Positions 5,983 to 20,326 of a DNA stretch of 64,000 nucleotides are shown piece by piece. Every line of letters starts with the position of its first letter. Position 1 is the first letter of the stretch. The stretch lies in IMG/VR virus record IMGVR_UViG_3300027770_001980, positions 1 through 64,000 of that record, one strand, 5' to 3'. A model generated the notes under the pieces. The model searched no databases, was not told the DNA's origin, and worked only from the letters and a program-made list of their open reading frames with translations. The translations under genes were made by a program, and so were the position numbers.

Positions 5983-6040
5983 AGGATAGCAACAGCAAAC
6001 TCAAAAATTTCAATGTTTATGAAACCAAAATGCTATCCTG
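5983..6040 (+). ncRNA. CAGCAA-handle RNA E1
   Basis: AGGATAGCA/TGCTATCCT helix, ACAGCAAA, hairpin TTTCA-atGTTta-TGAAA. Confidence 0.7.
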
Positions 6041-7150: not shown

Positions 7151-7211
7151 AGGATGCTAACCGCAAATTTATACTCTGAACTTTTAATTCAACCAGTAAA
7201 AATGCATCCTG
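7151..7211 (+). ncRNA. CAGCAA-handle RNA E3
   Basis: AGGATGC/GCATCCT helix, ACCGCAAA, hairpin TGAA-ctTTTaa-TTCA. Confidence 0.7.
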
Positions 7212-7611: not shown

Positions 7612-7617
7612 ATATAT

Positions 7618-7910: not shown

Positions 7911-8025
7911 CATACATGAACACATTCAACGGTAAACAGGATACCTGGCAACTGGACGCAGGGGCTATCCCGAAGATGTAGGGCACTACCACCGTAAAGT
8001 CAGGAAATGAGTGTGTTCCTATATG
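7911..8025 (+). repeat. inverted-repeat-bracketed cassette B3
   Basis: CATACATGAACACATTCA / TGAGTGTGTTCCTATATG; inner ACGGT/ACCGT helix. Confidence 0.7.
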
Positions 8026-8100
8026 GTGTCTTTAGTGTAGTGGCCTGCACCCTGCTCTGTGAAAGCGGTAGTACCGGATCGATACCGGTAAGGCACCCCA
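8025..8100 (+). tRNA. tRNA-His(GTG)
   Basis: G-1 and C73, CTGCT-ctGTGaa-AGCGG. Confidence 0.88.
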
Positions 8101-8143
8101 ATATTTATTGTAGAGCATAAATACATTTATAAGGTGCTCTGCA

Positions 8144-8527
8144 ATGTTAAACTCAATATGTAAAAATTGTTCAAAAGAATTTATTAAAGGTCGAAATACA
8201 ACAGGGACATACTGTTCACTACCTTGCACTTTTGAATCTCAAAAAAAAGAAAGAAGAGAAAATTTCTTAGAAGGAAAAATGGTTAACCGTGGATTAATGA
8301 AACAACATATGGTTGATATTCACAGTTGGCAATGTATGTGTTGTAAAAACACTGAATGGTTAGGAGTGCCAATTCCGTTGGAGTTGGATCACATTGATGG
8401 TAATGCAGGAGACAATCGACCTGAAAATTTGCGATTGCTATGTCCAAACTGCCATGCACAGACTCCAACACATAAAGCAAAGAATAAAGGCAATGGCCGC
8501 GGGAGTCGCGGATTGCCCTGGTATTAA
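8144..8527 (+). CDS. HNH endonuclease
   Basis: LELDHIDGNAGDNRPENLRLLCPNCHAQT with Cys pairs. Confidence 0.85.
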   Translation: MLNSICKNCSKEFIKGRNTTGTYCSLPCTFESQKKERRENFLEGKMVNRGLMKQHMVDIHSWQCMCCKNTEWLGVPIPLELDHIDGNAGDNRPENLRLLCPNCHAQTPTHKAKNKGNGRGSRGLPWY

Positions 8528-8529
8528 TT

Positions 8530-8603
8530 CCTCTTGTAGTTAAATGGTATAACGGCCTCTTGATAAGTGGTTATTACAAGTTCGATTCTTGTCGAGAGGA
8601 CCA
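8530..8603 (+). tRNA. tRNA-Ile(GAT)
   Basis: ttGATaa loop, ACCA. Confidence 0.85.
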
Positions 8604-8610
8604 AGTTTAC

Positions 8611-8685
8611 GCCTGGTTAGTTCAGCGGAAGAACGTCTGCCCGATTAGCGGAATGTTGTAGGTTCGACTCCTACACCGGGTACCA
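8611..8685 (+). tRNA. tRNA-Ile(GAT)-like with variant loop
   Basis: TCTGC-ccGATta-GCGGA (C33, U37); otherwise a normal cloverleaf. Confidence 0.7.
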
Positions 8686-8692
8686 AATCAAT

Positions 8693-8767
8693 GCGCCCGT
8701 AGTATAATGGATAATACACTAGGCTACGAACTTAGGAATGGTGGTTCGATTCCATCCGGGCGCACCA
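8693..8767 (+). tRNA. tRNA-Arg(ACG)
   Basis: CTAGG-ctACGaa-CTTAG. Confidence 0.9.
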
Positions 8768-8775
8768 ATAGTTAA

Positions 8776-8865
8776 GGAAGCGTGGCAGAGCCCGGCTTAT
8801 TGCAGCAGTCTTGAAAACTGCCGACCCGAAAGGGTCCGTGAGTTCGAATCTCACCGCTTCCGCCA
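8776..8865 (+). tRNA. tRNA-Ser(TGA)
   Basis: GCAGT-ctTGAaa-ACTGC, long variable arm. Confidence 0.92.
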
Positions 8866-8882
8866 ATACAATAAATAAGTCT

Positions 8883-9626
8883 ATGCGAATACATGAACTT
8901 ATTGTAGAAACTACTGAGGAAGATCGTGCTATCATTAGCCTTGCTGATGTTATCTATAAGGATCTACAGCAATATGCTGATACAGAATTAGACTACGATG
9001 AAACAGGTGTGATGCACATTGGACGCATCGGTGATCTGTTTGATACTCCGATTCCCGGACTTGATCGCGTGAGATTAGAAATATCTTCAGATGAGTCCAT
9101 AGTGGATCTGGCACGTAGACTTCACGGTAAGGCTACACCGTCAGATAGTCATTTTGGACAATGGGATCCTATGGAGAAGGCGATATCTTTAAATGCTGAT
9201 TACTTGAGCTCTAATCGTATGCGTAGTGTCATAGCACATGAATTAAGACATGCCATGGACGATATGAAATCGTTGAATAGGGCTAACCAAAGTACACGAT
9301 ATCGTACAGCAAGGAAGCCCGAGCATCAAGCAGATAAAGATGGTGCTTATCAAGCACAACCTGCAGAAATCAATGCTAGGTTTATCGAAGCGTTGAATGT
9401 GTTAGTGCCCGTCATACCAAAGTTGGCAAATTTAGAACCTGCTGCATTTAGAACAAAGATGACAGCATATATAAACAAAGCATTTGAACTTAAAGACATC
9501 GCAGATTATTATCCAGAAAAGACAGCAAGTCCACACTATAAGAGATTGCTGCAACGAGCATGGGCTTTTATTGAAAAAGAGCTGGCTCACATACGATCAC
9601 AAACAGTTGACACAGCGGCGGAATAA
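8883..9626 (+). CDS. putative Zn metallopeptidase-like protein
   Basis: HExxH (AHELRH) plus downstream EINA; start moved to MRIHEL because the track start lies inside the tRNA. Confidence 0.55.
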   Translation: MRIHELIVETTEEDRAIISLADVIYKDLQQYADTELDYDETGVMHIGRIGDLFDTPIPGLDRVRLEISSDESIVDLARRLHGKATPSDSHFGQWDPMEKAISLNADYLSSNRMRSVIAHELRHAMDDMKSLNRANQSTRYRTARKPEHQADKDGAYQAQPAEINARFIEALNVLVPVIPKLANLEPAAFRTKMTAYINKAFELKDIADYYPEKTASPHYKRLLQRAWAFIEKELAHIRSQTVDTAAE

Positions 9627-9635
9627 GTATATAAT
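9607..9635 (+). promoter_or_regulatory. sigma70 promoter (internal to array)
   Basis: TTGACA-17-TATAAT. Confidence 0.8.
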
Positions 9636-9641
9636 ATACTT

Positions 9642-9750
9642 GCGACCGTGAGTGGAACATGGCAGACCTCCGGACCGGGGATTCTCGGCGAGGGATGGGG
9701 CGAAGTCTTAGACACAGCCTTTGTAGGTTCAAACCCTACCGGTCGTACCA
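9642..9750 (+). ncRNA. Leu-type tRNA-like RNA with expanded central domain (109 nt)
   Basis: GCGACCG/CGGTCGT acceptor + ACCA, Leu-like D-loop, T-arm; no canonical anticodon arm. Confidence 0.6.
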
Positions 9751-9762
9751 GTTAAGAATTAA

Positions 9763-9851
9763 GGAATGGTCCCATAATGGTATTGGAGCAGATTGCTAAT
9801 CTGTCGGTCGTTTAATACGGCTTCCGAGTTCGAGTCTCGGTCATTCCGCCA
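9763..9851 (+). tRNA. tRNA-Ser(GCT)
   Basis: GCAGA-ttGCTaa-TCTGT, long variable arm. Confidence 0.9.
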
Positions 9852-9872
9852 AGTTGATAAAAGAAGAATTAT

Positions 9873-10670
9873 ATGATTTTAGATTGTGTTACATTTTTTA
9901 ATGAGTTAGAATTATTAGAGGGTAGATTAGAATACCTGTATGATACCGTAGACTATTTTATCATAGTTGAAAGTGATACAACTCATAGTGGTCACCCTAA
10001 ACCTTTAAACTATTTGCCTAACATACAGAGATATAAAAAATATCTGGACAAGATAATTTATTTTCCGTATCCGGCAGAAATTAAAGATCTAAATATCGAT
10101 CAAACTCTTGATAAATTTGATTACGATTCCGCACATTGGAAAATAGAGAAAAGACAAAGAAGTCATATTCTTAATGCGATAAAATTTTTCAAGGATGACG
10201 ATATAGTATTGATCAGTGATGTTGATGAGATTCCTTCTAAATCTGCTATCGAGATAGCATCCGAGCAGTTAGGAAAATCAGCAGCAGCATTTTCATTATC
10301 ACAGGATTTTTTCTTTTATAATTTTGCTCAGAGGCAAAGTTTTCCGTGGAAAGGTACTGTTGTTTCTACAAACAAATTTGTTCAACAACAAGGTCCGCAG
10401 TGGCTTCGTGATATGCGTTGGGATATTCCAACAATATTTCAAGGTGGATATCATTTGAGCTACTGGGGTGATCCAGAACGTATCGCAACTAAGATACAGA
10501 ACTTTGCACATCAGGAACTCAACAAAGAAACCTTTACAGATACCGAACGTATAAAAGAAAGAATTAAATCAGGTAACGATCCGTTTGATCGTCAACCATT
10601 GATTCCTGTAGAACCGGAATCAATTCCAAAAGACATTTATGACATATTCAACAAATATGGCAGTAGTTAA
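9873..10670 (+). CDS. GT17-family (GnT-III-like) glycosyltransferase
   Basis: FFNELELLEGRL, VESDTTHSG, SDVDEIP, GYHLSY, KIQNFAHQE. Confidence 0.8.
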   Translation: MILDCVTFFNELELLEGRLEYLYDTVDYFIIVESDTTHSGHPKPLNYLPNIQRYKKYLDKIIYFPYPAEIKDLNIDQTLDKFDYDSAHWKIEKRQRSHILNAIKFFKDDDIVLISDVDEIPSKSAIEIASEQLGKSAAAFSLSQDFFFYNFAQRQSFPWKGTVVSTNKFVQQQGPQWLRDMRWDIPTIFQGGYHLSYWGDPERIATKIQNFAHQELNKETFTDTERIKERIKSGNDPFDRQPLIPVEPESIPKDIYDIFNKYGSS

Positions 10671-10674
10671 TTTG

Positions 10675-10763
10675 TATCTCTGGTGTAATGGTATTGGAGC
10701 GGATTGCTAATCCGTCGAGTTGCGAAAGCAGCTTTCTGAGTTCGAGTCTCAGTCATTCCGCCA
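10675..10763 (+). pseudogene. chimeric tRNA-Ser(GCT) with foreign 5' end
   Basis: D-loop to CCA resembles the 9763 Ser; 5' TATCTCT cannot pair with 3' TCATTCC. Confidence 0.7.
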
Positions 10764-10770
10764 AATAAAT

Positions 10771-10847
10771 GAGTCAGTAGTTCCAATTGGCAGAACGTTG
10801 GTCTCCAAAACCAAATGTTGTAGGTTCAAATCCTACCTGGCTCGCCA
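10771..10847 (+). tRNA. tRNA-Trp(CCA)
   Basis: TTGGT-ctCCAaa-ACCAA. Confidence 0.92.
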
Positions 10848-10871
10848 AACAAAGATAGTAAATAATAGTAT

Positions 10872-10945
10872 GCGGGTATGATGTAAAGGTAACCTGAAAC
10901 CTTGCCAAGGTTTATTTGAGAGTTCGATTCTCTCTACCCGCTCCA
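10872..10945 (+). tRNA. tRNA-Gly(GCC), copy 2
   Basis: AAACC-ttGCCaa-GGTTT. Confidence 0.9.
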
Positions 10946-10949
10946 AATA

Positions 10950-11045
10950 GGCCGGACCTGTATCCATATTCCGGCTCCGCTGACGCGAAAACAGGATGGG
11001 CTGCGCTCACGGGGTTTGATTGTTTCCCGACACAACAATAACAAT
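10950..11045 (+). ncRNA. unassigned pseudoknot-forming RNA
   Basis: GCCGGA/TCCGGC stem whose loop CCTGT can pair with ACAGG (10991-95). Confidence 0.4.
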
Positions 11046-11059
11046 CACCAAACATATGG

Positions 11060-11104
11060 CCTCACCCTCTAGCAACATAGTTCTACGGTGAGGTTTTCTT
11101 TTTT
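11060..11104 (+). terminator. terminator-like hairpin inside array
   Basis: CCTCACC/GGTGAGG with a long loop, followed by a T-rich tract. Confidence 0.45.
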
Positions 11105-11165
11105 AGGATAGCAACAGCAAACATTTAAAAACTTTTCTTGAACAAAAGCCAAAAATGCTATCCTG
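11105..11165 (+). ncRNA. CAGCAA-handle RNA E4
   Basis: AGGATAGCA/TGCTATCCT helix, ACAGCAAA, hairpin CTTTT-ctTGAac-AAAAG. Confidence 0.7.
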
Positions 11166-11174
11166 TTTTATTAT

Positions 11175-11250
11175 GCCATAGTAGCTCCAATGGTAGAGCA
11201 GCGGACTGAAAATTCGTGTGTTGCTGGTTCGAATCCAGCCTATGGTACCA
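11175..11250 (+). tRNA. tRNA-Phe(GAA)
   Basis: GCGGA-ctGAAaa-TTCGT. Confidence 0.92.
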
Positions 11251-11258
11251 ATTTATAA

Positions 11259-11266
11259 TATAAATA
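11259..11266 (+). promoter_or_regulatory. T4-like late promoter TATAAATA
   Basis: Exact octamer just upstream of the ATG; it also occurs at 13684, 49547, 52268 (+) and 27083, 44861, 51988 (-). Confidence 0.6.
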
Positions 11267-11271
11267 TTTTT

Positions 11272-11991
11272 ATGAAAATTGCAATATTACTATCCGGACA
11301 ACCAAGATTTACTCAAGAGTTTCAATTATTTTTAGATAATTTAGTAGGTTATGATCAAGCAGATTGGTTTGTTTACATGACCAATAATAATCACGATCCT
11401 TTTAAAGATAATCGCATTAAAATTCCAGAGACCTGGATAAATTATGAAATAGATTGGGCCAGAGAGACTATAACAAGAAATCTTCCTCCTAACAATTTTC
11501 TCAGACGTTTCGAAATATCGAATGTACACGAACAAATTTTTCCAACTCTTCGAGAAGAACATCTATCTGGTAATCAAGCTATTTTCAAAATGCACTATAA
11601 TATATTTAAAACAAATCAATTAAGAGAAGAATATGAAACCTCTTATAATTTTAAATACGATGCAATTGTTAGAGCCCGCCCCGATGTTGGACTTAATCAG
11701 ATAATAGATCTTCGAAAATTTGATTTGTCGACCAGGGGAGTCTTTATGCCTTGCCCTTTTTATGGACACCCAGGGAGAGAGTCTAATGATTTGATTGGAT
11801 TTGGTAATTCGGAGGTCATGTCTATTTACAGTAATGCCTTACATCATTTCAAAGAATATAGTGATGCTGGAGAAATAGTTTGCCCTGAAACACTATTATC
11901 ACGGCACTTGATTACAAATAATGTATCACGTATAAAATCTGATTTTAGTCACATTTTTCGAACTCTGCCTTTAGATCCTAAATGGTTTTGA
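11272..11991 (+). CDS. glycosyltransferase-like protein, paralog 1
   Basis: MKIAILLSGQPRF...KYDAIVRARPD...NDLIGFG; start reassigned out of tRNA-Phe. Confidence 0.6.
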   Translation: MKIAILLSGQPRFTQEFQLFLDNLVGYDQADWFVYMTNNNHDPFKDNRIKIPETWINYEIDWARETITRNLPPNNFLRRFEISNVHEQIFPTLREEHLSGNQAIFKMHYNIFKTNQLREEYETSYNFKYDAIVRARPDVGLNQIIDLRKFDLSTRGVFMPCPFYGHPGRESNDLIGFGNSEVMSIYSNALHHFKEYSDAGEIVCPETLLSRHLITNNVSRIKSDFSHIFRTLPLDPKWF

Positions 11992-12010
11992 GTGTCTGAA
12001 CTAATTACAT

Positions 12011-12097
12011 GGAAGATAGAAGTGCCGGGCACTAAGCAACTTGGAAAGTTGTTCCACTCTGAAAGGGGTGACAGTTCGACTCTGTTATCTTCCTCCA
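12011..12097 (+). tRNA. tRNA-Ser(GGA)
   Basis: GCAAC-ttGGAaa-GTTGT, long variable arm, atypical D-arm. Confidence 0.8.
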
Positions 12098-12117
12098 ACA
12101 CACTAAAGGAGCATAAC

Positions 12118-12180
12118 ATGTTAGTAATAGGATTATTAGTAATCATGGGTATGCTCTATTTGATTATTAGAAAGTTATAA
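12118..12180 (+). CDS. 20-aa hydrophobic peptide
   Basis: AAGGAG RBS; MLVIGLLVIMGMLYLIIRKL*. Confidence 0.5.
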   Translation: MLVIGLLVIMGMLYLIIRKL

Positions 12181-12181
12181 T

Positions 12182-12257
12182 GGTAGAGTAGCATAGCGGC
12201 TAATGCACCAGCTTCATACGCTGTCGATCGTGGGTTCGAGTCCCACCTCTACTACCA
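12182..12257 (+). tRNA. tRNA-Met(CAT)
   Basis: CAGC-ttCATac-GCTG. Confidence 0.85.
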
Positions 12258-12262
12258 ATCAA

Positions 12263-12382
12263 TGTCGTTGTCGTCTAATGGTAGGACGCTTATAAAAGGT
12301 TATCCTGTTAAGGATACAGTCAGCACAATCAAATTCCATGTCAAGGAAGAGATCTGGGTTCGAATCCCAGCTGCGACCCCCA
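12263..12382 (+). ncRNA. tRNA-like RNA with branched anticodon domain (~120 nt)
   Basis: Acceptor, D-arm, T-arm and CCA present; the centre holds TATCC-TGTTAA-GGATA and TTCC-atGTCaa-GGAA hairpins. Confidence 0.65.
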
Positions 12383-12388
12383 GTTTAT

Positions 12389-12464
12389 GTACATGAGCCC
12401 GAAGATTGAGGGTACCGTTAATTGAGACGGCGAAAGGCGATTGAGATGATACCCATGTACGCCA
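12389..12464 (+). ncRNA. 76-nt tRNA-like RNA lacking a TPsiC loop
   Basis: Perfect GTACATG/CATGTAC + GCCA; GCCC/GGGT and CCGTT/GACGG arms. Confidence 0.55.
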
Positions 12465-12466
12465 AG

Positions 12467-12615
12467 TTTCGAGATAGACGTAGAGATCGAGTCCCCTGTA
12501 CGCTAGTGCCCTATTTCTTGAGCATGACACACCAGTAGCAGTATCGGGTCAAGCAAAACTCTCTCATACGAGACAAACCAATGAGTCCTTGAGAAAGATA
12601 GTTGGAGGCTCGAAA
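12467..12615 (+). ncRNA. unassigned structured RNA (~150 nt)
   Basis: TTTCGAG/CTCGAAA closure; CTTGA/TCAAG and CTCAT/ATGAG helices. Confidence 0.45.
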
Positions 12616-12623
12616 ACCTATAT

Positions 12624-12709
12624 GCTCTGGTGCAGGGAATTGGAAGACCGGCAACGTTGAGAACGTTGTGACCTAACAGGTGTGGGTTCGAGTCCCACCC
12701 AGAGCACCA
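12624..12709 (+). tRNA. tRNA-Leu(GAG)
   Basis: CAACG-ttGAGaa-CGTTG. Confidence 0.88.
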
Positions 12710-12713
12710 ATTT

Positions 12714-12787
12714 AGTTCCTTAGTTTAATGGCAGAACACTACCTCGACACGGTGACAATGAAAGTTCGATTCTTTCAGGAACTACCA
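12714..12787 (+). tRNA. tRNA-Val(GAC)
   Basis: TACC-tcGACac-GGTG (C33 variant). Confidence 0.8.
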
Positions 12788-12877
12788 TATATAAAAACAT
12801 ATTAGGCCCTCGGTCGTAGACTTGAGTTGCGGGTATAGTGCCTTCCAAGCCGTGGACTCGAATGTGTTTTTATATAT
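12787..12877 (+). repeat. inverted-repeat-bracketed cassette B4
   Basis: ATATATAAAAACATATT / AATGTGTTTTTATATAT (17 bp); cargo has tRNA-Gly-like GCGGGTATAGT and GC-ctTCCaa-GC. Confidence 0.75.
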
Positions 12878-12905
12878 GAAAGTTCGATTCTTTCAGGAAC
12901 TACCA
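12876..12905 (+). repeat. 30-bp direct repeat of the tRNA-Val 3' end
   Basis: ATGAAAGTTCGATTCTTTCAGGAACTACCA, identical to 12758-12787. Confidence 0.9.
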
Positions 12906-12906
12906 A

Positions 12907-12981
12907 CTCTCTATAGTTCAATGGATAGAACACATTCCTCCTAAGAATGGGATGCAGGTTCGATTCCTGCTGGAGAGACCA
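12907..12981 (+). tRNA. tRNA-Arg(CCT)
   Basis: CATTC-ctCCTaa-GAATG. Confidence 0.92.
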
Positions 12982-12993
12982 AATAAATATTAT

Positions 12994-13070
12994 GCCCCGT
13001 TACGCTAATTGGTAGTGCGGATTCTCTCAAAAGGAGTTGGCTGTCTGTTCGAATCAGACACGGGGTACCA
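12994..13070 (+). tRNA. tRNA-Leu(CAA), short variable arm
   Basis: ATTCT-ctCAAaa-GGAGT; 77 nt. Confidence 0.78.
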
Positions 13071-13075
13071 CTTAT

Positions 13076-13150
13076 CGGTCTTTAGTGAAATGGATATCAT
13101 CTTTGTCTTCGAAACAAAAGTTGTGGGTTCGATCCCTGCAAGACCGGCCA
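13076..13150 (+). tRNA. tRNA-Arg(TCG)
   Basis: TTTGT-ctTCGaa-ACAAA. Confidence 0.9.
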
Positions 13151-13154
13151 ATCT

Positions 13155-13228
13155 GCTCCTATAGGTAAATGGTATACCAGCACTTTGGTAAAGTGCAATT
13201 ACAAGTTCGATTCTTGTTAGGAGCACCA
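13155..13228 (+). tRNA. tRNA-Thr(GGT)
   Basis: GCACT-ttGGTaa-AGTGC. Confidence 0.9.
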
Positions 13229-13236
13229 AAAAAAAC

Positions 13237-13265
13237 TTGACACACCGACAGAAATACAGTATAAT
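13237..13265 (+). promoter_or_regulatory. sigma70 promoter (internal to array)
   Basis: TTGACA-17-TATAAT. Confidence 0.8.
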
Positions 13266-13330
13266 TACTACATAGACAGCAAACGATAGAGTTAGTTGTT
13301 GTGTGTTCATTAACAATACAAGTTGGTTTT

Positions 13331-13414
13331 GCGGGTGTGGTGGAATGGTATACACAGCAGACTTAAAATCTGCCGCTGAAAAGCATGCCGGTTCGAGTCC
13401 GGCCACCCGCACCA
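13331..13414 (+). tRNA. tRNA-Leu(TAA)
   Basis: GCAGA-ctTAAaa-TCTGC. Confidence 0.92.
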
Positions 13415-13518
13415 TATTGAAACACATTGTGGAGAGCACTGTGTAGATTGAGAAGGTTTGATTCCGACTCACTACATCACTCGGTATCCTGCGGCCGCAA
13501 CAGTGTGCTTCAATATGG
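13412..13518 (+). repeat. inverted-repeat-bracketed cassette B5
   Basis: CCATATTGAAACACATTGT / ACAGTGTGCTTCAATATGG; cargo TGTAG/CTACA helix with GGTTTGATTCC T-loop mimic. Confidence 0.75.
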
Positions 13519-13522
13519 TGTT

Positions 13523-13641
13523 ATATTAAAATATACTTTTCGTCTCCAGTAGCCCAAACCCGGGGGAATCGCATATTGAGAATGTGCATAGCACAACGGT
13601 ACAGCAAGCATAAGACACTTGTTGGAAGTATGTTTTAATAT
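13523..13641 (+). repeat. inverted-repeat-bracketed cassette B6
   Basis: ATATTAAAATATACTT / AAGTATGTTTTAATAT; cargo GCATATT/AATGTGC hairpin. Confidence 0.72.
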
Positions 13642-13647
13642 GATTCC

Positions 13648-13680
13648 CTGGCGTTCGTATAATGGATAATACAGGGGATT
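13648..13680 (+). pseudogene. 5' half of a split tRNA-Arg(TCT)
   Basis: CTGGCGT acceptor strand, D-arm, GGGGA-TT; its partner half is at 14447-14488. Confidence 0.8.
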
Positions 13681-13698
13681 TAGTATAAATAGATATAT

Positions 13699-13775
13699 GC
13701 GACTGTAGCTCAGTTGGATAGAGTACCCGGCTTCTACCCGGATTGTCGGGGGTTCGAATCCCTCCAGTCGCACCA
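13699..13775 (+). tRNA. tRNA-Arg(TCT), replacement copy inside the insertion
   Basis: CCGG-ctTCTac-CCGG, full cloverleaf. Confidence 0.88.
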
Positions 13776-13790
13776 TTTAGTAGAAAATGT

Positions 13791-14429
13791 ATGTATCAAA
13801 AACTAACAAACTGTAAGCATTGTAATATCTCTTTAGAGAGTATGAATGCCAACGAAAGGGCAAACCATTCGAGATGGTGTACATCAAACCCTAAACGGGT
13901 TGAATATGTAAATGCGCTGGCCAAGCATAGAGAAAATATTGTCGCTCCTCGAAATCAATTTGTTAAAGCAAAAGACGAGGGACGACCTGTTCCAAAAGGA
14001 ACAATGACCGGAAAACCCGGAACGATGTTAGGTAAGAAACATTCTCTGGAAACAAAGCAACATCTTAAAGAAAAAGCGTTAGCAAGCCCACATAGAAGAT
14101 TAGTTAGGTCCATTAGAAAATATACACAAAAGGATGGAACTATTGTTAATTTAGATTCTTCTTGGGAAGAAGCATTGGCAATTCGCCTTGATGAACTTAA
14201 TGTTAATTGGATCCGACCCAAGCCGATAAAATGGATAGATGACAATGGTATAACCCATAACTATTTTCCAGACTTTTATCTTGTTGATTTCGACGTATAT
14301 TTAGATCCAAAAAATCCTTATGCTATTAAGGCACAGGAAAGCAAAATAAAATGTTTGACAAAACAGATAAAAAATCTTATAATCATAAGAGGATTAGAAG
14401 AGTGTAAAAATTATACCCCTATAGTTTAA
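13791..14429 (+). CDS. putative homing endonuclease (NUMOD3-like repeat + PD-(D/E)xK domain)
   Basis: GKKHSLETKQHL; DSSWE...YFPDFYL...YLDPKN. Confidence 0.7.
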   Translation: MYQKLTNCKHCNISLESMNANERANHSRWCTSNPKRVEYVNALAKHRENIVAPRNQFVKAKDEGRPVPKGTMTGKPGTMLGKKHSLETKQHLKEKALASPHRRLVRSIRKYTQKDGTIVNLDSSWEEALAIRLDELNVNWIRPKPIKWIDDNGITHNYFPDFYLVDFDVYLDPKNPYAIKAQESKIKCLTKQIKNLIIIRGLEECKNYTPIV

Positions 14430-14488
14430 TGGTAAAACGGCGGATTTCTACTCCCTAAATAGCAGTTCGATTCTGTTACGCCGGACCA
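14415..14488 (+). pseudogene. chimeric tRNA: foreign 5' half + 3' half of Arg(TCT)
   Basis: 3' TCTAC-TCCCT...ACGCCGG-ACCA complements 13648-13680, not the adjacent ACCCCTAT...GGCGGATT. Confidence 0.75.
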
Positions 14489-14499
14489 AAGATTTTATT

Positions 14500-14589
14500 G
14501 CGAGCGAGACTTGGAGTCCGAGGGGTCTTATATGCCCTTTCCGCCAGATTAGCGGCTTTGAGAGAGTTCGATTCTCTCCGCTCGTACCA
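14500..14589 (+). tRNA. tRNA-Ile(TAT)-like with long variable arm
   Basis: GGGT-ctTATat-GCCC, short D-arm, extra CCGC-cagatta-GCGG hairpin. Confidence 0.65.
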
Positions 14590-14638
14590 CCTATCACAAT
14601 TAGGTTCTTTTGTTAAAATATCATATAATTAATATATT

Positions 14639-15340
14639 ATGAACAATGAAAAACATCAACCTATTACAGTGGTAGTGCCTACCATGTGGAGACATTCTCC
14701 ATTTTTAGATTTTGCACAGGACTTCTTAGAATTAAATGTAGTCGAACATTTAATCATCATCGACAATGATATCTCAAGAAGACCCAACCATCCGGTATTG
14801 ACCAATTCCAAAATAACTATTTTTGAATTTGGAAAAAATATATTTGTCAATCCTGCTTGGAACTTAGGAGTCAACAACAGCAAAACTAATATTGTTTGCA
14901 TATTGAATGATGATTTAAATTTTGATATCAGATTATTCAATAGAGTATCTAAGTTTATTAAACCTGATATGGGTGCAATAGGATTGAGTAACGGAATAGC
15001 AGAATTTGGACAAACAATTTTAACTGACGGAATGATCAATTTTGAACCATTTCATGGACAGATATGTGAAGGATTTGGTAATCTCATGTTTGTACATAAA
15101 TCTACATGGAAAGATATACCCGAAGGGTTGAATATCGCATATGGAGATAATTTCATTTTCGAACAAAATCTTTACAACAATCGAACAAACTATTTTATTG
15201 TTAATATGTTTCATCACCATGCAGCATCTACCACAGTTAAAGAAGTATTAAAAGATAAAGATGTGAAAGATGTTTTTTGGCTACGAGAAAGTCTTCTATA
15301 TAAAGACATCAAGGTCAAATTAATGAATAGAACATTTTAG
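14639..15340 (+). CDS. GT2-like glycosyltransferase
   Basis: VVVPTMW, IIDND, VNPAWNLG, LNDD, YGDNFI. Confidence 0.7.
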   Translation: MNNEKHQPITVVVPTMWRHSPFLDFAQDFLELNVVEHLIIIDNDISRRPNHPVLTNSKITIFEFGKNIFVNPAWNLGVNNSKTNIVCILNDDLNFDIRLFNRVSKFIKPDMGAIGLSNGIAEFGQTILTDGMINFEPFHGQICEGFGNLMFVHKSTWKDIPEGLNIAYGDNFIFEQNLYNNRTNYFIVNMFHHHAASTTVKEVLKDKDVKDVFWLRESLLYKDIKVKLMNRTF

Positions 15341-15350
15341 AAAGAATAGT

Positions 15351-15425
15351 GGGCTTTTAGCTTAATGGTAAAGCAGTCGACTCATAATCGATTGAGTGTA
15401 GGTTCAATTCCTACAAAGCCCACCA
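15351..15425 (+). tRNA. tRNA CAT (Ile2/lysidine-type or Met)
   Basis: GTCGA-ctCATaa-TCGAT; GGGC acceptor resembles Ile2. Confidence 0.82.
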
Positions 15426-15466
15426 TATCTCAAAGTTAGAGATAAATACTCTAACCGGAGCACGTA

Positions 15467-15895
15467 ATGTTAAAAGAATATACATGTAAAGATTGTGGTA
15501 AAGAAGGAAAAGAAAATTTTTATCAATATCGATATCAATGCAAATCTTGTTGGAATAAACGCACATATCAATCAAGTAGAGATAAATTAGATTTACTCAT
15601 ACACGAAAGAGGCGGAAAATGCGAAAGATGTGGATACAATAAATGCATGGATGCTTTACAGTGGCATCATATAGATCCTACAATTAAAGAGTTTGGAATA
15701 AGCAAACAACGAGGTGCATCGATAGAAGTATTACGAAAAGAAATTGATAAGTGTTCTTTATTATGTGCAAACTGTCATGTCGAGGTACATGCAGAAATGC
15801 GAAATAAAGGATATAAAGTTGTCAGAATTACCCATCCAGAATTTAAAGAAAGATATTTTTCTGGTAAGGGATTTTTAGATTTAATGCGGGTGTGA
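15467..15895 (+). CDS. HNH endonuclease
   Basis: CERCGYNKCMDALQWHHIDP...LLCANCHVEVH. Confidence 0.85.
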   Translation: MLKEYTCKDCGKEGKENFYQYRYQCKSCWNKRTYQSSRDKLDLLIHERGGKCERCGYNKCMDALQWHHIDPTIKEFGISKQRGASIEVLRKEIDKCSLLCANCHVEVHAEMRNKGYKVVRITHPEFKERYFSGKGFLDLMRV

Positions 15896-15972
15896 TGAAA
15901 TTGGTAGACTTCCGGTCCTTAGAAGTCCGGGTTCGAAAGAGCGTGCTGGTTCGAGTCCAGTCACCCGCACCA
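15886..15972 (+). tRNA. tRNA-Leu(TAG)
   Basis: ctTAGaa loop, long variable arm. Confidence 0.85.
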
Positions 15973-15979
15973 TTATAGG

Positions 15980-16008
15980 TTGACAACTTACCTACATAGT
16001 TGTATAAT
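15980..16008 (+). promoter_or_regulatory. sigma70 promoter
   Basis: TTGACA-17-TATAAT. Confidence 0.8.
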
Positions 16009-16029
16009 TAATTTTAATAAAAGGAAAGT

Positions 16030-16206
16030 ATGAAAACAACTGCAACATTTCGATTGAATAAGCGTTTCAAAACACTTATCTCTGCTATGCCATTTAAGAG
16101 CCAAGAACAACGTGACCATTTTCGTCACATGATGATCGAGGCACAGGTAGCAGCAAATACCATTGTCAAGAGTTCTAAGGACCGTAACAACAACCGAGGT
16201 GAATAA
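16030..16206 (+). CDS. hypothetical protein (58 aa)
   Basis: AAGGA RBS; MKTTATFRLNKRFK...RGE*; coupled to rpoZ. Confidence 0.65.
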   Translation: MKTTATFRLNKRFKTLISAMPFKSQEQRDHFRHMMIEAQVAANTIVKSSKDRNNNRGE

Positions 16207-16430
16207 TGAAAACTCCAGATTTTGTTAACAGTCTTGACACCGACAAGTGTGTGTCTAACATTGGTAGCCGATTTGATTTAGTTATTGTTGCTGCTATTCG
16301 TGCCCGCGAGTTGAATCGTGGTCATAGAAAAATGGTCAATAGTCCAAATGGTAATATTGTTAGTGCTCTGCAAGAAATCGAAGCAGGACACATTGGGCGT
16401 GATTACTTGCGAAAGGTTCGTCGACCATGA
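16206..16430 (+). CDS. rpoZ: RNA polymerase omega subunit homolog
   Basis: SRFDLVIVAAIRAREL...IVSALQEIEAGHI matches the RpoZ family core. Confidence 0.8.
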   Translation: MKTPDFVNSLDTDKCVSNIGSRFDLVIVAAIRARELNRGHRKMVNSPNGNIVSALQEIEAGHIGRDYLRKVRRP

Positions 16431-16603
16431 GCAAAGGTTCCAGACAGCGTCCAACAGATCTAAATAAGTTTCGATCAAACTACGATGCTATCTTCCGAAA
16501 GCCTTCTCCAAAAGAAGTAGATGATGCTCAAGCAGAAGATGAAGCATTCAAGAGAGTTGAAGAACAGCAATCACAAGTTCGAGACAGTGACCAAGGCGGC
16601 TAA
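16427..16603 (+). CDS. hypothetical protein (58 aa)
   Basis: MSKGSRQRPTDLNKFRSNYDAIFRK...GG*; ATGA overlap. Confidence 0.6.
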   Translation: MSKGSRQRPTDLNKFRSNYDAIFRKPSPKEVDDAQAEDEAFKRVEEQQSQVRDSDQGG

Positions 16604-16616
16604 TAAATAGAGATGC

Positions 16617-16690
16617 GCCCTACTAGTACAATGGTAGTACACTGGTTTTGTAATCCTGTGATGGCAGTTCGATTCTGTCGTAGGGCACCA
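16617..16690 (+). tRNA. tRNA-Thr(TGT), copy 2
   Basis: ttTGTaa loop; weak anticodon stem. Confidence 0.8.
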
Positions 16691-16698
16691 AGAGATAT

Positions 16699-17041: not shown

Positions 17042-17076
17042 AAATATTTAGTAAATAGAGTTTTAATGTATTAAGA

Positions 17077-17151: not shown

Positions 17152-17159
17152 GTTTTATT

Positions 17160-18517: not shown

Positions 18518-18624
18518 AGGATGCATCCAGCAAACACTTTTTGCCACCAAAATCAGGCAGGCCGTGCAATTGGGCACCGTAGTTGAAATAGGGGTTCGAT
18601 TCCCGGCGATACTACAGCATCCTG
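18518..18624 (+). ncRNA. CAGCAA-handle RNA E5 with tRNA-elbow mimic
   Basis: AGGATGC/GCATCCT helix, CCAGCAAA, D-arm-like GTGC-AATTGG-GCAC, T-arm GGG-TTCGATT-CCC. Confidence 0.7.
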
Positions 18625-18700: not shown

Positions 18701-18833
18701 AGGTTAGGTACAGCAACTATTCATTACTATGGACTGCTACTTATCACATTCGGACATCAAACTCCGAATTTAAGTAGATAGAGGAGTTTCGATAAGTCTC
18801 CTCGATAAAAATAAAAAGTAGACAACTAACCTG
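18701..18833 (+). ncRNA. CAGCAA-handle RNA E6
   Basis: AGGTTAG/CTAACCT helix, ACAGCAAC; CTACTTA/TAAGTAG, ATTCGGA/TCCGAAT and GAGGAG/CTCCTC arms. Confidence 0.7.
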
Positions 18834-18841
18834 TTGAATAT

Positions 18842-18896
18842 AGAATGTTAACAGCAATCTTATATTTCATTTATATCGAAAATAAAATACATTCTG
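18842..18896 (+). ncRNA. CAGCAA-handle RNA E7
   Basis: AGAATGT/ACATTCT helix, ACAGCAAT, TTTC-a-ttTATat-c-GAAA; ends about 15 nt before the DUF2828 ATG. Confidence 0.65.
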
Positions 18897-18910: not shown

Positions 18911-20326
18911 ATGAACGCATTTGTAAACGCAATCGCAAACCAAGAAGCCCGTACTGCCAATGGCATGAAGGCTCGTAAGTCAACCGCCAACAAGTGTGTT
19001 GACCTGTTCTACAACATCGGTGCAAGCCGTGGTAAGAACATCATCCCTGCATTCACTGCGGCTTATGTTGAAAACTTTGACATGGCTCTGCGTATCGCAC
19101 AATGGGCTCGTGATGTCCGTGGTGGTGCAGGCGAACGTGAACTATTCCGTAGTGTACTTGTACACTTGGAAAAGACTGATCCAGATGCCGCTATGGCTCT
19201 GTTGAAGAAGATCCCAGAAGTGGGTCGTTGGGATGACATCTTTGTCTTTCAAACTCCTGCGTTGAAGTCTGCTGCTTACACAATGTTGGGTGACGCACTA
19301 CGTGCATCAAACGGATTGGCAGCTAAGTGGACACCACGTAAGGGCAAGATCGCAGCAGAAGTCCGTGAGTTCTTCGGAATGAGCCCAAAGTTCTACCGTA
19401 AGAGTCTTGTGGCTCTGACCAAGGTCGTTGAAACACAAATGTGTGCCAAGGACTGGGACAACATCAACTTCAGTCACGTACCAAGCGTGGCTGCTCGTAA
19501 CTACAAGAAGGCTTTCGGACGTAACACTCCAAAGTTTGCTGAGTACGTGGCTGCATTGGTTAAGGGCACACCTGGTGTGAAGGTTAACGCTAACGCGATT
19601 TTCCCACACGATGTGTTGAAGGGTCTAATTGGTTCGTACAACCGTACCAAGTTGTCTAAGACAGATCTGGATCACATCACTGCACAATGGAACGCTTTGC
19701 CAAACTACGTTGGAGATGCCAGCATCCTTCCAATCGTGGACGTAAGCGGCTCTATGAGTTGCAAGGCAGGTGGTGAAGGTACTGTTACCTGTATGGATAT
19801 TTCTGTTAGCCTTGGCTTGTACTTGGCTGATAAGAACAAGGGCGTGTTCAAGGACACATTCTTGACATTCAGTGACAAGCCTGATTTGATGACTCTTAAG
19901 GGCGACATCGTCCAAAAGTTGGATCAAATGGAAACAAGCGACTGGGGTATGAGCACAAATCTACACGCAGCATTTGAAAAGATTCTGAGTGTGGCAGTTA
20001 AGGGCAATGCTCCTCAAGAAGACATGCCAGCAATGGTACTAATCTTGAGCGACATGCAATTTAACCAATGTGTTAAGCATGACGACAGTGCCATGGAAAT
20101 GATCGAACGCAAGTTCGAAGCAGCCGGATACACTTGTCCAAAGGTTGTTTTCTGGAACCTAAACAGTTCTGGCAATGTACCAGTCAAGTCAGATAAGAGC
20201 GGTGCCGCTCTTGTAAGTGGATTTAGTCCAGCAATCATGGCCAGCTTGCTGGGTGCGGATGTGGAACAATTCACTCCAGAAGGTATCATGCGTAAGACTG
20301 TAATGGTTCCACGCTACGATCTGTAA
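18911..20326 (+). CDS. DUF2828-family Ro60/TROVE-like vWA protein
   Basis: T-NG start, VDLFYNIGASR, ARDVRGGAGER, GRWDD, AKWTPR, MIDAS DVSGSM, SDMQF, FWNL, LVSGFS; strongly biased codon usage. Confidence 0.8.
   Translation: MNAFVNAIANQEARTANGMKARKSTANKCVDLFYNIGASRGKNIIPAFTAAYVENFDMALRIAQWARDVRGGAGERELFRSVLVHLEKTDPDAAMALLKKIPEVGRWDDIFVFQTPALKSAAYTMLGDALRASNGLAAKWTPRKGKIAAEVREFFGMSPKFYRKSLVALTKVVETQMCAKDWDNINFSHVPSVAARNYKKAFGRNTPKFAEYVAALVKGTPGVKVNANAIFPHDVLKGLIGSYNRTKLSKTDLDHITAQWNALPNYVGDASILPIVDVSGSMSCKAGGEGTVTCMDISVSLGLYLADKNKGVFKDTFLTFSDKPDLMTLKGDIVQKLDQMETSDWGMSTNLHAAFEKILSVAVKGNAPQEDMPAMVLILSDMQFNQCVKHDDSAMEMIERKFEAAGYTCPKVVFWNLNSSGNVPVKSDKSGAALVSGFSPAIMASLLGADVEQFTPEGIMRKTVMVPRYDL

What the first reader, a model, noticed from the sequence alone, without database searches (positions are those of the whole stretch)
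12263..12382. tRNA scaffold carrying two queuosine-family anticodon-like hairpins
Seen: normal acceptor, D-arm, T-arm and CCA, but the anticodon arm is replaced by about 60 nt holding TATCC-TGTTAA-GGATA (contains CTGTTAA, the Asn loop heptamer; register ambiguous) and TTCC-atGTCaa-GGAA (Asp). With the cassette cargos (GTA, GTG), all four GUN anticodons occur as extra hairpins in the array. Known: TGT and colicin E5 recognise these loops. Inference: this is a multivalent decoy or an intron-like tRNA.
Basis: partly seen in the sequence, partly recalled or inferred. Interest (0 to 1): 0.65.

Follow-up and report, generated by a model that had tools for sequence, protein, structure and literature searches.

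The report
tRNA carrying a Ro-protein RNA module
This phage gene is a complete aspartate-type tRNA with a 44-base insert in its anticodon stem. The insert matches a small RNA motif that recurs through phage tRNA arrays and always travels with a phage Ro60-like RNA-binding protein, so the molecule is most likely a tRNA-shaped partner RNA of that protein, not a decoy with two anticodons.

Summary
Window 12264-12382 is a full tRNA cloverleaf (Rfam tRNA 39.3 bits) with a normal GUC anticodon loop. Covariation places a 44-nt insert between tRNA positions 29 and 30. Hairpin 1 is not anticodon-like: it is a covarying helix capped by a 6-nt loop.

The insert (A-rich leader, helix, UCAGCA) is a circular permutation of a cassette that occurs six more times in the same array and in many other phages, next to the gene or in the same tRNA array. 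That cassette has a G-started end helix, a UACAGCAA motif, a variable cargo that is often an anticodon-stem-loop mimic or a permuted tRNA, an A-run and CUGU. A model of the cassette finds it beside a DUF2828 gene in cyanophage, Listeria, Campylobacter, FelixO1-like and mycobacterial phages. The window's copy of that gene (18911-20326) folds as Ro60/Rsr.

KVP40 "tRNA-Pseudo-3/4/5" belong to the target's family. The best reading is a Y-RNA-like ligand of the phage Ro-like protein built on a tRNA body; binding is inferred, not shown. The cassette also resembles Dictyostelium Class I RNAs, below Rfam's threshold. There is no evidence of splicing.

The parts
12264..12382 (+). Whole RNA gene: tRNA-Asp(GUC)-type cloverleaf with a 44-nt insert and an encoded 3' end CCCCA
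   Evidence: Rfam tRNA 39.3 bits. Family alignment A3 with covariation in every helix.
12264..12270 (+). Acceptor stem 5' strand GUCGUUG. It pairs with 12371-12377 (CUGCGAC), with one U-U mismatch and one G-U wobble.
   Evidence: all 7 acceptor pairs show compensatory changes across the family.
12273..12287 (+). D arm: GUCU stem, AAUGGUA loop, GGAC stem
12289..12291 (+). tRNA positions 27-29 (CUU), pairing with AAG at 12347-12349 (positions 41-43)
   Evidence: Compensatory changes UA:8 GC:2 AU:1 and UA:11 GC:1. The rival contiguous UUCC/GGAA pairing is broken in 4 of 12 and 2 of 12 sequences without compensation. The BUCT-ZZ01 copy has ACG/CGU.
12292..12299 (+). Start of the insert: A-rich leader AUAAAAGG. 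It corresponds to the A-run before the 3' strand of the cassettes.
   Evidence: the 3'-half HMM hits 12294-12309.
12301..12316 (+). Hairpin 1: strand X UAUCC, loop UGUUAA, strand Y GGAUA. This is the closed form of the cassette end helix (AUCC|UGUU ... UA|GGAU).
   Evidence: Covarying stem with an invariant C-G closing pair. The same strands occur in cassettes in permuted order.
12320..12325 (+). UCAGCA motif (UCNGCA across the family). It corresponds to the ACAGCAA motif of the cassettes.
   Evidence: Near-invariant in A1 and A3. The 5'-half HMM, built without the window's own cassettes, hits 12308-12325 at 9.5 bits, against noise of at most 5.8 bits.
12326..12335 (+). Variable linker; end of the insert
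   Evidence: Not conserved in sequence or length among close relatives.
12336..12349 (+). tRNA positions 30-43: CC, anticodon loop AUGUCAA (anticodon GUC at 12340-12342), then GGAAG
12354..12370 (+). T arm: CUGGG stem, UUCGAAU loop, CCCAG stem
5983..6039 (+). Cassette 1, the permuted relative of the insert: GGAUAGCA-ACAGCAA ... hairpin ... AAAA-UGCUAUCC, flanked by GUUUUA on both sides
   Evidence: Model R1 scores 73.7 bits, but this sequence was used to build the model.
7151..7210 (+). Cassette 2; its cargo hairpin has the loop CUUUUAA, a Lys-type anticodon loop
11105..11164 (+). Cassette 3
18518..18623 (+). Cassette 4; its cargo includes a T-arm-like hairpin
   Evidence: R1 scores 34.6 bits; this sequence was not in the model.
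18701..18832 (+). Cassette 5, with a conserved cargo of about 118 nt (the cassette spans 132 nt)
18842..18895 (+). Cassette 6, directly upstream of the Ro-like gene. Its best Rfam match is Dicty_Class_I_RNA at 20.8 bits, which is below threshold.
18911..20326 (+). Ro60/Rsr-like protein gene (DUF2828 + DUF7788/vWA; phrog_850). Proposed protein partner of the module and the cassettes.
   Evidence: Pfam; PHROGs; AF2 model with pLDDT 90.9; the top 13 Foldseek hits are all Ro60/Rsr/TROVE.

Best explanation
The gene encodes a hybrid RNA: an intact tRNA body (acceptor stem, D arm, T arm and an Asp-type anticodon stem-loop) with a 44-nt module between positions 29 and 30.

The module is the capped-hairpin version of the end helix and flanking strands (A-run; UCAGCA, matching ACAGCAA) that define a family of roughly 55- to 170-nt cassette RNAs scattered through phage tRNA arrays. 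I propose that this helix-plus-motif is the docking site for the phage's Ro60-like protein (window 18911-20326). The RNA would then work like a bacterial Y RNA of the YrlA type: one end binds the Ro ring, and the other end, here a real tRNA shape with free ends, engages something that recognises tRNAs (a processing or modification enzyme, a synthetase, an anticodon nuclease or the ribosome).

Shown: the cloverleaf, the insert position, conservation and covariation, the permuted identity with the cassettes, the Ro60 fold of the neighbouring protein, and their co-occurrence across distant phages.

Inferred: binding of the module to the Ro-like protein, retention of the insert in the mature RNA, and the tether or adapter role.
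For: - Structure and insert position.
- The family spans KVP40-like vibriophages (annotated tRNA-Pseudo-3/4/5), Cronobacter S13, Aeromonas phiAS5 and APT65, Synechococcus BUCT-ZZ01 and many IMG/VR contigs.
- Variants in which a full 5-bp anticodon stem closes the module with no anticodon loop (KVP40 Pseudo-4/-5), and cassettes holding circularly permuted tRNAs (for example on L128), show that the module plus a tRNA shape is what is conserved. The anticodon and a free CCA end are not.
- The insert equals a permuted cassette.
- The cassette helix covaries in 5 of 7 pairs.
- Model R1 finds cassettes immediately beside the DUF2828 gene in phages not used to build it: BUCT-ZZ01 54 bits; Listeria LMTA-94 46 and 41 bits; Campylobacter CP30A 34 bits; Alf5 28 bits; LilDestine 22 bits. 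Phage T4 gives none.
- The protein has the Ro60 fold and is labelled 'Ro-like RNA binding protein' in mycobacteriophages.
- Nine of the ten other module-bearing genomes tested (eight with a strong match, one a weak partial one) encode it, as does the window's own record; the exception is a 52%-complete fragment. T4 has neither the module nor the protein.
- Precedent for Ro plus adjacent tRNA-like Y RNAs in bacteria and phages: PMC4201824, PMC12135203.
- In Listeria phage CKA15, an Rsr-like protein lies less than 2 kb downstream of three extremely abundant unannotated transcripts near the tRNAs: PMC12282133.
- An RNA-library contig covers 12279-12354 without a gap.
Against: - No binding data exist for any DUF2828 protein with any of these RNAs.
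- In the window the target lies 6.5 kb from the gene, although the cassettes bridge that gap.
- The module differs from known Ro-binding sites: there is no GNCGAA motif, and the Rfam YrlA model scores only 15 bits.
- Topology is unlike every described Y RNA, where the 5' and 3' ends form the Ro-binding stem.
- The half-HMM support for the permutation is modest (E 0.15 and 0.92) and rests largely on visual identity of the strands.
- The RNA evidence comes from metatranscriptome contigs of relatives, which may contain DNA and cannot exclude a spliced minority.
- A perfect tRNA is left when the insert is removed, which is what an intron would look like.
Confidence: 0.55

Rival explanations
1. Intron-containing tRNA. 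The 44-nt insert is cut out, by phage or host enzymes, and the exons are joined to give an ordinary decoding tRNA-Asp(GUC).
For: Removing 12292-12335 gives a perfect cloverleaf. The stem pairs flanking the insert are maintained by compensatory changes. Most relatives keep a proper 7-nt loop with U33 and A37. Listeria phages with the same Ro-like gene also carry an annotated 'tRNA-splicing ligase' nearby.
Against: At 44 nt the insert is far too small for a group I intron, and Rfam found none. By inspection there is no bulge-helix-bulge motif, and the related isolated phages infect bacteria. The own 221-kb record has no RtcB and no Rnl2-type ligase. Family members such as KVP40 Pseudo-4/-5, S13 t23 and L133 have no anticodon loop to restore. 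Close relatives L002-L005 have an 8-nt loop. The array already has two normal tRNA-Asp genes. No joint skipping the insert was seen in four RNA libraries, while one RNA-library contig spans it.
Confidence: 0.12
2. Decoy or sponge. The RNA presents anticodon-like loops on a tRNA body to soak up host anticodon nucleases or modification enzymes (TGT, colicin-E5-like, PrrC-like).
For: Most type-A members carry GUC or GUU, both queuosine-family anticodons. Small cassettes very often carry hairpins of 4-6 bp (mostly 5) with canonical CU-NNN-AA loops, and the Lys-type CUUUUAA is the commonest at 8 of 44. tRNA-Lys is a known target of phage-defence nucleases (established knowledge).
Against: Hairpin 1 is not an anticodon-type loop and often lacks UGU. 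The anticodon is variable or absent in the family. The extra GUA and GUG hairpins were not found. What is conserved is the helix and motif shared with Ro-gene-linked cassettes, and a pure decoy does not need that. This idea can coexist with the main explanation, with the decoy as the cargo of a Ro particle.
Confidence: 0.1
3. Dead gene. A tRNA-Asp gene was hit by the ends of a small mobile cassette (MITE-like: inverted ends, GUUUUA-type flanks), leaving a functionless pseudo-tRNA, which is how KVP40's annotation labels it.
For: The cassettes have inverted terminal strands and similar short flanks on both sides. The window copy has an acceptor mismatch and an extra C before CCA. Some relatives lack 12258-12461 altogether (joint 12224 to 12462). 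KVP40's annotators called these genes pseudo-tRNAs.
Against: All helices, including hairpin 1 and the split anticodon stem, are kept by compensatory changes across very distant phages. That pattern means selection on the RNA fold. KVP40 keeps three diverged copies.
Confidence: 0.08
4. Processing punctuation. The module and the cassettes are only cleavage or folding signals for maturing the long tRNA-array transcript (RNase E- or RNase P-type cuts at the GUUUUA or UGAUAA flanks).
For: Cassettes sit exactly between a CCA end and the next tRNA, with U-rich flanks. Tandem cassettes are separated by UGAUAA or UGUUCAA, the same letters as the hairpin-1 loop.
Against: The same cassette sits beside the Ro-like gene in LilDestine, where no full tRNA was annotated or found. 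It also lies several hundred nt from the nearest tRNA in CP30A, LMTA-94 and BUCT-ZZ01. A signal inside a tRNA's anticodon stem would destroy that tRNA rather than mature it. The invariant ACAGCAA motif and the anticodon-like cargos are not explained.
Confidence: 0.07

Closest known systems
Bacterial and phage Y RNAs of the YrlA type with Ro60/Rsr (Chen et al. 2014, PMC4201824; Thermus phage phiLo Ro60 with Yrl1/2, PMC12135203)
   Same: A non-coding RNA encoded on the same strand near a Ro60-fold protein gene. It combines a conserved protein-docking helix and an adjacent single-stranded motif with a domain that mimics tRNA (D arm, T arm, acceptor). There are several such RNAs per locus.
   Different: The protein belongs to the DUF2828 family, not Pfam TROVE. 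The motif is UACAGCAA/UCAGCA, not GNCGAA. In the target the RNA ends lie in a true acceptor stem with an encoded CCA, and the docking helix is a capped hairpin inside the anticodon stem; in YrlA the ends form the docking stem and the acceptor is capped. Rfam YrlA scores 15 bits against a gathering score of 69.
Dictyostelium Class I RNAs (Rfam RF01414; Kjellin et al. 2021, PMC7919456)
   Same: This comparison applies to the cassettes, whose ends make up the target's insert. Both are about 60 nt, start with an invariant 5' G, have a covarying terminal stem of about 6 bp, carry the motif ..UUACAGCAA directly after the 5' strand, have a variable middle, and end 3' with C-UGU. RF01414 is the only non-tRNA Rfam family that repeatedly matches them: 20.8-28.4 bits in four phages.
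   Different: All scores fall below the gathering score of 41.5. Class I RNAs are reported as unique to dictyostelids, have their own promoter element, and are known to bind an RRM protein (Rnp1A/CIBP). No link to a Ro-like protein has been reported. In the target the motif is permuted and reduced to UCAGCA.
KVP40 'tRNA-Pseudo-3, -4, -5' and similar 'tRNA-OTHER' features (NC_005083; Cronobacter S13 t23/t24)
   Same: The same family: a tRNA scaffold of 113-124 nt with the same module in the anticodon arm.
   Different: These exist only as annotation labels. They are sometimes mis-called tRNA-Phe or tRNA-Ser, or are left unannotated. I found no description of the insert, its position or its link to cassettes or a protein.
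Phage T4 stable RNAs species 1 and 2 (rnaC, rnaD)
   Same: Stable RNAs of unknown function at the end of a T4-type tRNA cluster, of similar size (139 and 119 nt). rnaC has a tRNA-like T arm.
   Different: They cannot be aligned with the module. T4 has no cassette hit (best 17.9 bits, E 0.44) and no DUF2828 gene.
Non-canonical archaeal tRNA introns and permuted tRNA genes
   Same: An insert at a non-canonical position inside a stem (I recall that 29/30 is used in some Crenarchaeota; this is from my own knowledge and was not checked here). Circularly permuted tRNA versions also exist in related loci.
   Different: There is no bulge-helix-bulge motif. The known hosts of relatives are bacteria. 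No splicing was seen, and many members have no anticodon loop to restore.

Membership tests
tRNA (Rfam RF00005) | Cloverleaf scoring at or above the family's gathering score | tested here: met
   39.3 bits against 29. All four stems covary.
tRNA (Rfam RF00005) | Uninterrupted anticodon stem | tested here: not met
   There is a 44-nt insert between positions 29 and 30. ARAGORN does not call the gene.
tRNA (Rfam RF00005) | Is aminoacylated and decodes on the ribosome | not testable with these tools
   This needs charging and translation assays. The window copy has discriminator C, an acceptor mismatch and CCCCA at the 3' end.
Y RNA / YrlA (RF02553) | Encoded near a Ro60-fold protein gene and on the same strand | tested here: met
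   The Ro-fold gene is at 18911-20326 on the + strand. The target lies 6.5 kb upstream with cassettes in between. In S13, APT65, phiAS5 and BUCT-ZZ01 the distance is 0.3-2.5 kb.
Y RNA / YrlA (RF02553) | Contains a tRNA-like domain | tested here: met
   A full cloverleaf is present.
Y RNA / YrlA (RF02553) | 5' and 3' ends pair to form the Ro-binding stem, with a GNCGAA-type motif in the adjacent loop | tested here: not met
   The ends lie in the acceptor stem, the candidate docking helix is a capped hairpin, and the motif is UCAGCA. The cassettes do have end-joining stems, but with ACAGCAA.
Y RNA / YrlA (RF02553) | Reaches the Rfam gathering score | tested here: not met
   15.2 bits against 69, and only over the tRNA-like part.
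Y RNA / YrlA (RF02553) | Binds Ro60/Rsr | not testable with these tools
   This needs EMSA, RIP or cryo-EM.
Dictyostelium Class I RNA (RF01414) | Terminal stem starting with G, an 11-nt CCUUACAGCAA-type motif after the 5' strand, and a 3' CUGU | tested here: inconclusive
   The cassettes have all three features. The target has them only in permuted, reduced form: UCAGCA, with the loop UGUUAA joining the strands.
Dictyostelium Class I RNA (RF01414) | Reaches the Rfam gathering score | tested here: not met
   Cassettes score 20.8-28.4 bits against 41.5. The target itself gave no hit.
Group I intron in a tRNA gene | A ribozyme core of about 200 nt or more inserted in the anticodon loop | tested here: not met
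   The insert is 44 nt and sits in the stem, not the loop. No intron family appeared in the Rfam e-value scan.
Protein-spliced tRNA intron (bulge-helix-bulge) | A bulge-helix-bulge at the exon-intron borders, and an endonuclease plus ligase available | tested here: inconclusive
   No such motif was seen by inspection. RtcB and an Rnl2-type ligase are absent from the 62%-complete record. A splicing endonuclease was not searched for.

The most novel reading that the evidence does not exclude
The module-bearing tRNAs, the cassettes in phage tRNA arrays and the Class I RNAs of dictyostelid amoebae are one ancient RNA family. It is defined by a G-started end helix, a UACAGCAA motif and CUGU, and it is the cognate ligand of DUF2828-type Ro60-like proteins in viruses and eukaryotes. 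Phages plug anticodon-stem-loop mimics, permuted tRNAs or whole tRNAs into it as exchangeable cargo. This would give Class I RNAs a protein partner and a biochemical context. It would also define a second, very widespread Ro/Y-RNA system: the protein is found in 708 phage records.
Probability: 0.3. Interest if true: 0.9.

Novelty: new variant of a known kind. Interest (0 to 1): 0.75.

Why it matters
- It gives a testable identity to RNAs that have sat in phage genomes as 'pseudo-tRNAs' since KVP40 was annotated.
- It shows that many 'spacers' in phage tRNA arrays are conserved structured RNAs carrying anticodon-stem-loop or tRNA mimics.
- It ties these RNAs to a highly conserved, abundant phage protein with a Ro60 fold whose RNA partners are unknown. 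The protein occurs in FelixO1-like, P100-like, Campylobacter, mycobacterial and T4-like phages, several of which are used in biocontrol.
- It offers a new Y-RNA topology, in which the docking helix lies inside the anticodon stem and the tRNA ends are free.
- It provides a lead on the unexplained Class I RNAs of Dictyostelium.
- It bears on how phages interact with host tRNA biology and tRNA-targeting defences.

Tried and rejected
- Homology with T4 rnaC/rnaD: not alignable beyond the T arm.
- Known small ribozymes and riboswitches: the loop CUGAUAAG resembles the hammerhead CUGAUGA box but lacks the essential G, and a preQ1-I-like A-tail lies on the wrong side of the hairpin. No Rfam family other than tRNA reached significance on the target.
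- A pseudoknot between loop CUG and downstream CAG: the middle base varies without compensation.
- The contiguous UUCC/GGAA hairpin 2: rejected in favour of the split stem.
- Further copies of the module in the own 221-kb record: none.
- Descent from the array's own tRNA-Asp genes: there is no special similarity; the best match is tRNA-Pro at 72%.
- Splicing evidence: no joint across the insert in four metatranscriptome runs. This is a weak test, because the data are contigs of relatives.
- RNA-repair genes in the record: RtcB, Pfam TROVE and the RNA_ligase family were all absent.
- Sequence search of the Ro-like protein against the PDB: nothing by phmmer and only weak Ro60 hits by profile. 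The fold search was decisive.
- Literature: nothing found on the insert, on DUF2828 function, or on the Class I pull-down protein DDB_G0281243.
- The Atlas look-up gave no information on eukaryotic members.
- I could not score a permuted copy of the target with the cassette model, because the tool searches only held sequence. I used half-HMMs instead.

Full report
**Setting.** The window is the first 64 kb of a 221-kb IMG/VR virus record, about 62% complete. DNA holders of the sequence are freshwater metagenomes. A tRNA array runs from 5650 to 18512, with 41 ARAGORN calls, and is interspersed with HNH endonuclease and other ORFs.

**The observation.** ARAGORN skips the region, but the Rfam tRNA model matches 12264-12378 at 39.3 bits (gathering score 29), with 55 nt where 11 central anticodon-arm positions should be. 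A minimum-energy fold of the single sequence is unremarkable (z = -0.35), so the case rests on comparison with relatives.

**Relatives.**
- Pattern scans of IMG/VR and blastn against phage genomes found the same long tRNA-like gene in many contigs.
- It also occurs in named phages: Cronobacter S13 ('tRNA-OTHER', plus a neighbouring 121-nt 'tRNA-Ser'), Aeromonas phiAS5 and APT65, the whole KVP40 group of vibriophages, and Synechococcus phage BUCT-ZZ01.
- In KVP40 these genes are annotated tRNA-Pseudo-3, -4 and -5.

**Structure.** I tested two structures on 12 distinct members (alignment A3).
- Split stem: CUU directly after G26 pairs with AAG (positions 27-29 with 41-43), and CC just before the loop pairs with GG (30-31 with 39-40). 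This is 97% paired, with compensatory changes such as U-A to G-C and to A-U.
- Contiguous UUCC/GGAA hairpin: it loses pairs in 4 of 12 and 2 of 12 sequences without compensation.
- The cyanophage copy adds ACG/CGU in support of the split stem.

The molecule is therefore a complete cloverleaf with a 44-nt insert (12292-12335) between positions 29 and 30. Removing the insert gives a 75-nt tRNA-Asp(GUC) that folds as a cloverleaf.

Hairpin 1 has a covarying 4-5-bp stem, an invariant C-G closing pair and a 6-nt loop (UGUUAA, UGAUAA, UGACAA or UGUAUA). It is not an anticodon loop. Flanking it are an A-rich leader and a near-invariant UCNGCA.

The anticodon of the real loop varies across the family:
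- GUC in most members;
- GUU in L126, phiAS5, KVP40 Pseudo-3 and BUCT-ZZ01;
- UCC in S13;
- UAC in APT65;
- an 8-nt loop in L002-L005;
- no anticodon loop at all in KVP40 Pseudo-4/-5, S13 t23 and L133, where a full 5-bp stem encloses the module and, in some members (Pseudo-4, S13 t23), a further small hairpin.

The module, not the anticodon, is the constant.

The window copy has a U-U mismatch in the acceptor stem and ends in CCCCA. GUA and GUG loops occur only in the ordinary tRNA-Tyr and tRNA-His.

**The insert is a permuted cassette.** Repeats in the array led to six elements with a common form: (CCA)GUUUUA-GGAU..-(U)ACAGCAA ... cargo ... AAAA-..AUCC-UGUUUUAUU. They lie at 5983-6039, 7151-7210, 11105-11164, 18518-18623, 18701-18832 and 18842-18895.

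The insert carries the same pieces joined the other way round: AAAAGG-UUAUCC-UGUU | AA-GGAUAC-AG-UCAGCA. HMMs of the two cassette halves, built without the window's own copies, hit 12294-12309 and 12308-12325 back to back. For the 5' half this ranks above all background (9.5 bits against at most 5.8). The 3' half is marginal (7.5 against 7.3).

A script found about 87 distinct cassettes in the fetched loci.
- Small cassettes usually hold a 4-6-bp stem (mostly 5 bp) with a 7-nt loop of anticodon type. CUUUUAA is the commonest at 8 of 44.
- Larger cassettes hold circularly permuted tRNAs, with the acceptor closed by a loop. One on L128 is the exact permutation of the KVP40 Pseudo-5 arrangement.
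- The cassette helix covaries in 5 of 7 pairs.
- Tandem cassettes are separated by UGAUAA or UGUUCAA, the same letters as the hairpin-1 loop.

**The protein.** Directly after cassette 6 lies ORF 18911-20326.
- It carries DUF2828 + DUF7788 and belongs to phrog_850, 'RNA-binding protein'.
- An AlphaFold model from a 59-sequence alignment has pLDDT 90.9.
- Its 13 best PDB fold matches are all Ro60, Rsr or TROVE proteins aligned over the full length, including the Ro60 of Thermus phage phiLo (E from 1e-8 to 1e-6).
- A sequence profile gives only weak Ro60 hits, and the Pfam TROVE model does not match.
- The family occurs in 708 phage records and is labelled 'Ro-like RNA binding protein' in mycobacteriophages.
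- It is present in KVP40, S13, APT65, phiAS5 and BUCT-ZZ01, with a weak partial match (27%, E 6.5e-11) on the L128 contig, and in three near-complete module-bearing contigs. It is absent from T4 and from one 52%-complete fragment.

**Linkage test.** A covariance model (R1) built from 26 small cassettes found significant matches immediately next to this gene in phages that did not contribute to the model:

| Phage | Score | Position relative to the gene |
|---|---|---|
| Synechococcus BUCT-ZZ01 | 54 bits | just upstream |
| Listeria LMTA-94 | 46 and 41 bits | just upstream |
| Campylobacter CP30A | 34 bits | just upstream |
| Felixounavirus Alf5 | 28 bits | in the tRNA array that follows the gene |
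| Mycobacteriophage LilDestine | 22 bits | just downstream |

There was nothing significant in T4, or elsewhere in the window outside the array.

A multi-omics study of the P100-like Listeria phage CKA15 reports three extremely abundant unannotated transcripts near the tRNAs, less than 2 kb upstream of an Rsr-like protein that is also found in virions. Its authors suggest the transcripts are Y RNAs (PMC12282133).

**Comparison with known families.**
- Ro60 proteins bind Y RNAs encoded next to them. Bacterial and phage YrlA RNAs carry a tRNA-like domain (PMC4201824), and a phage Ro60 binds two adjacent Y-like RNAs and host PNPase (PMC12135203). The present RNAs share that logic but fail YrlA's defining details: the end topology (for the target), the GNCGAA motif and the Rfam score.
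- The only other Rfam family that matches the cassettes is the Dictyostelium Class I RNA, always below threshold: 20.8-28.4 bits against 41.5, in four phages.
- Its published hallmarks fit the cassettes point by point: about 60 nt, an invariant 5' G, a covarying 6-bp end stem, an 11-nt CCUUACAGCAA motif and a 3' CUGU. The authors found the class only in dictyostelids (PMC7919456).
- One of four proteins pulled down with a Class I RNA is of unknown function (bioRxiv 10.1101/2020.04.05.026054). I could not check whether it is a DUF2828 protein.

**RNA evidence.** Four metatranscriptome runs hold only contigs of relatives. One 80-nt contig (depth 27.5) covers 12279-12354 without a break, and no joint skips the insert. 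Some relatives lack 12258-12461 entirely. This is weak evidence against splicing and shows that the gene is dispensable in some genomes.

**Verdict.** The feature is real, conserved and mis-described as a two-anticodon decoy. The best-supported reading, at about 0.55, is a tRNA-bodied, Y-RNA-like ligand of the phage Ro60-like protein. The intron, decoy, pseudogene and processing-signal readings are each much less likely. Binding and function remain to be shown.

**Compliance with the operators' notes.** No alternative genetic code was used.

Noticed in passing
window 12119-12181: A 20-codon ORF (MLVIGLLVIMGMLYLIIRKL) with an AAGGAG ribosome-binding site lies between tRNA-Ser(GGA) and tRNA-Met. 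Contigs of some relatives skip it (joints 12098 to 12180/12182).
   Followed up: no
window 12383-12623: A 240-nt ORF-free stretch follows the target, with long-range pairing GUACAUG...CAUGUAC. The part 12462-12632 is conserved in relatives that lack 12258-12461. It may be another structured RNA.
   Followed up: partly
window 7618-7688; 7788-7909; 6380-6455; 10674-10762; 14422-14477; 12876-12905: Further tRNA-like elements that ARAGORN misses: a 48.9-bit tRNA; a 27-bit tRNA-like with an insert of about 50 nt; one with an aberrant D arm; a second Ser(GCU)-like copy; a partial tRNA; and an exact 30-nt repeat of the 3' end of tRNA-Val.
   Followed up: partly
window 18701-18832; also on L004, L006, L052, L073 and L107: Cassette 5 carries a conserved cargo of about 118 nt (larger in relatives) with a GAGGAGUUUCGAUAAGUCUCCUC hairpin. 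In several relatives it lies upstream of the small GAAUGU cassette, and where the downstream gene was fetched (the window), both precede the Ro-like gene.
   Followed up: no
L145 (Listeria phage LMTA-94) 6849-8060: An annotated 'tRNA-splicing ligase' (RtcB-type by name) lies 1.3 kb downstream of the DUF2828 Ro-like gene. This recalls the rsr-yrlA-rtcBA operon of Salmonella.
   Followed up: no
L146 (Campylobacter phage CP30A) 2907-3320: At least four unannotated tRNA genes (three at 61-75 bits, one partial at 38 bits), plus a weaker candidate, lie in the 1.3-kb 'empty' gap upstream of the Ro-like gene, followed by two cassettes.
   Followed up: partly
window 16206-16430; 11218-11991, 17160-17891(-), 22469-23287(-); 8144-8527, 15467-15895: An RNA-polymerase omega/Rpb6-like 74-aa ORF sits inside the tRNA array. 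There are also three paralogous ORFs: 11218-11991 and 17160-17891 match phrog_13607 and weakly DUF7796; 22469-23287 matches DUF7796. Two HNH endonuclease ORFs sit inside the array as well.
   Followed up: no
PMC12282133 (Listeria phage CKA15): The Ro-like protein of a P100-like phage was detected in purified virions with 57% sequence coverage. This suggests the protein, and perhaps its RNAs, may be packaged.
   Followed up: no
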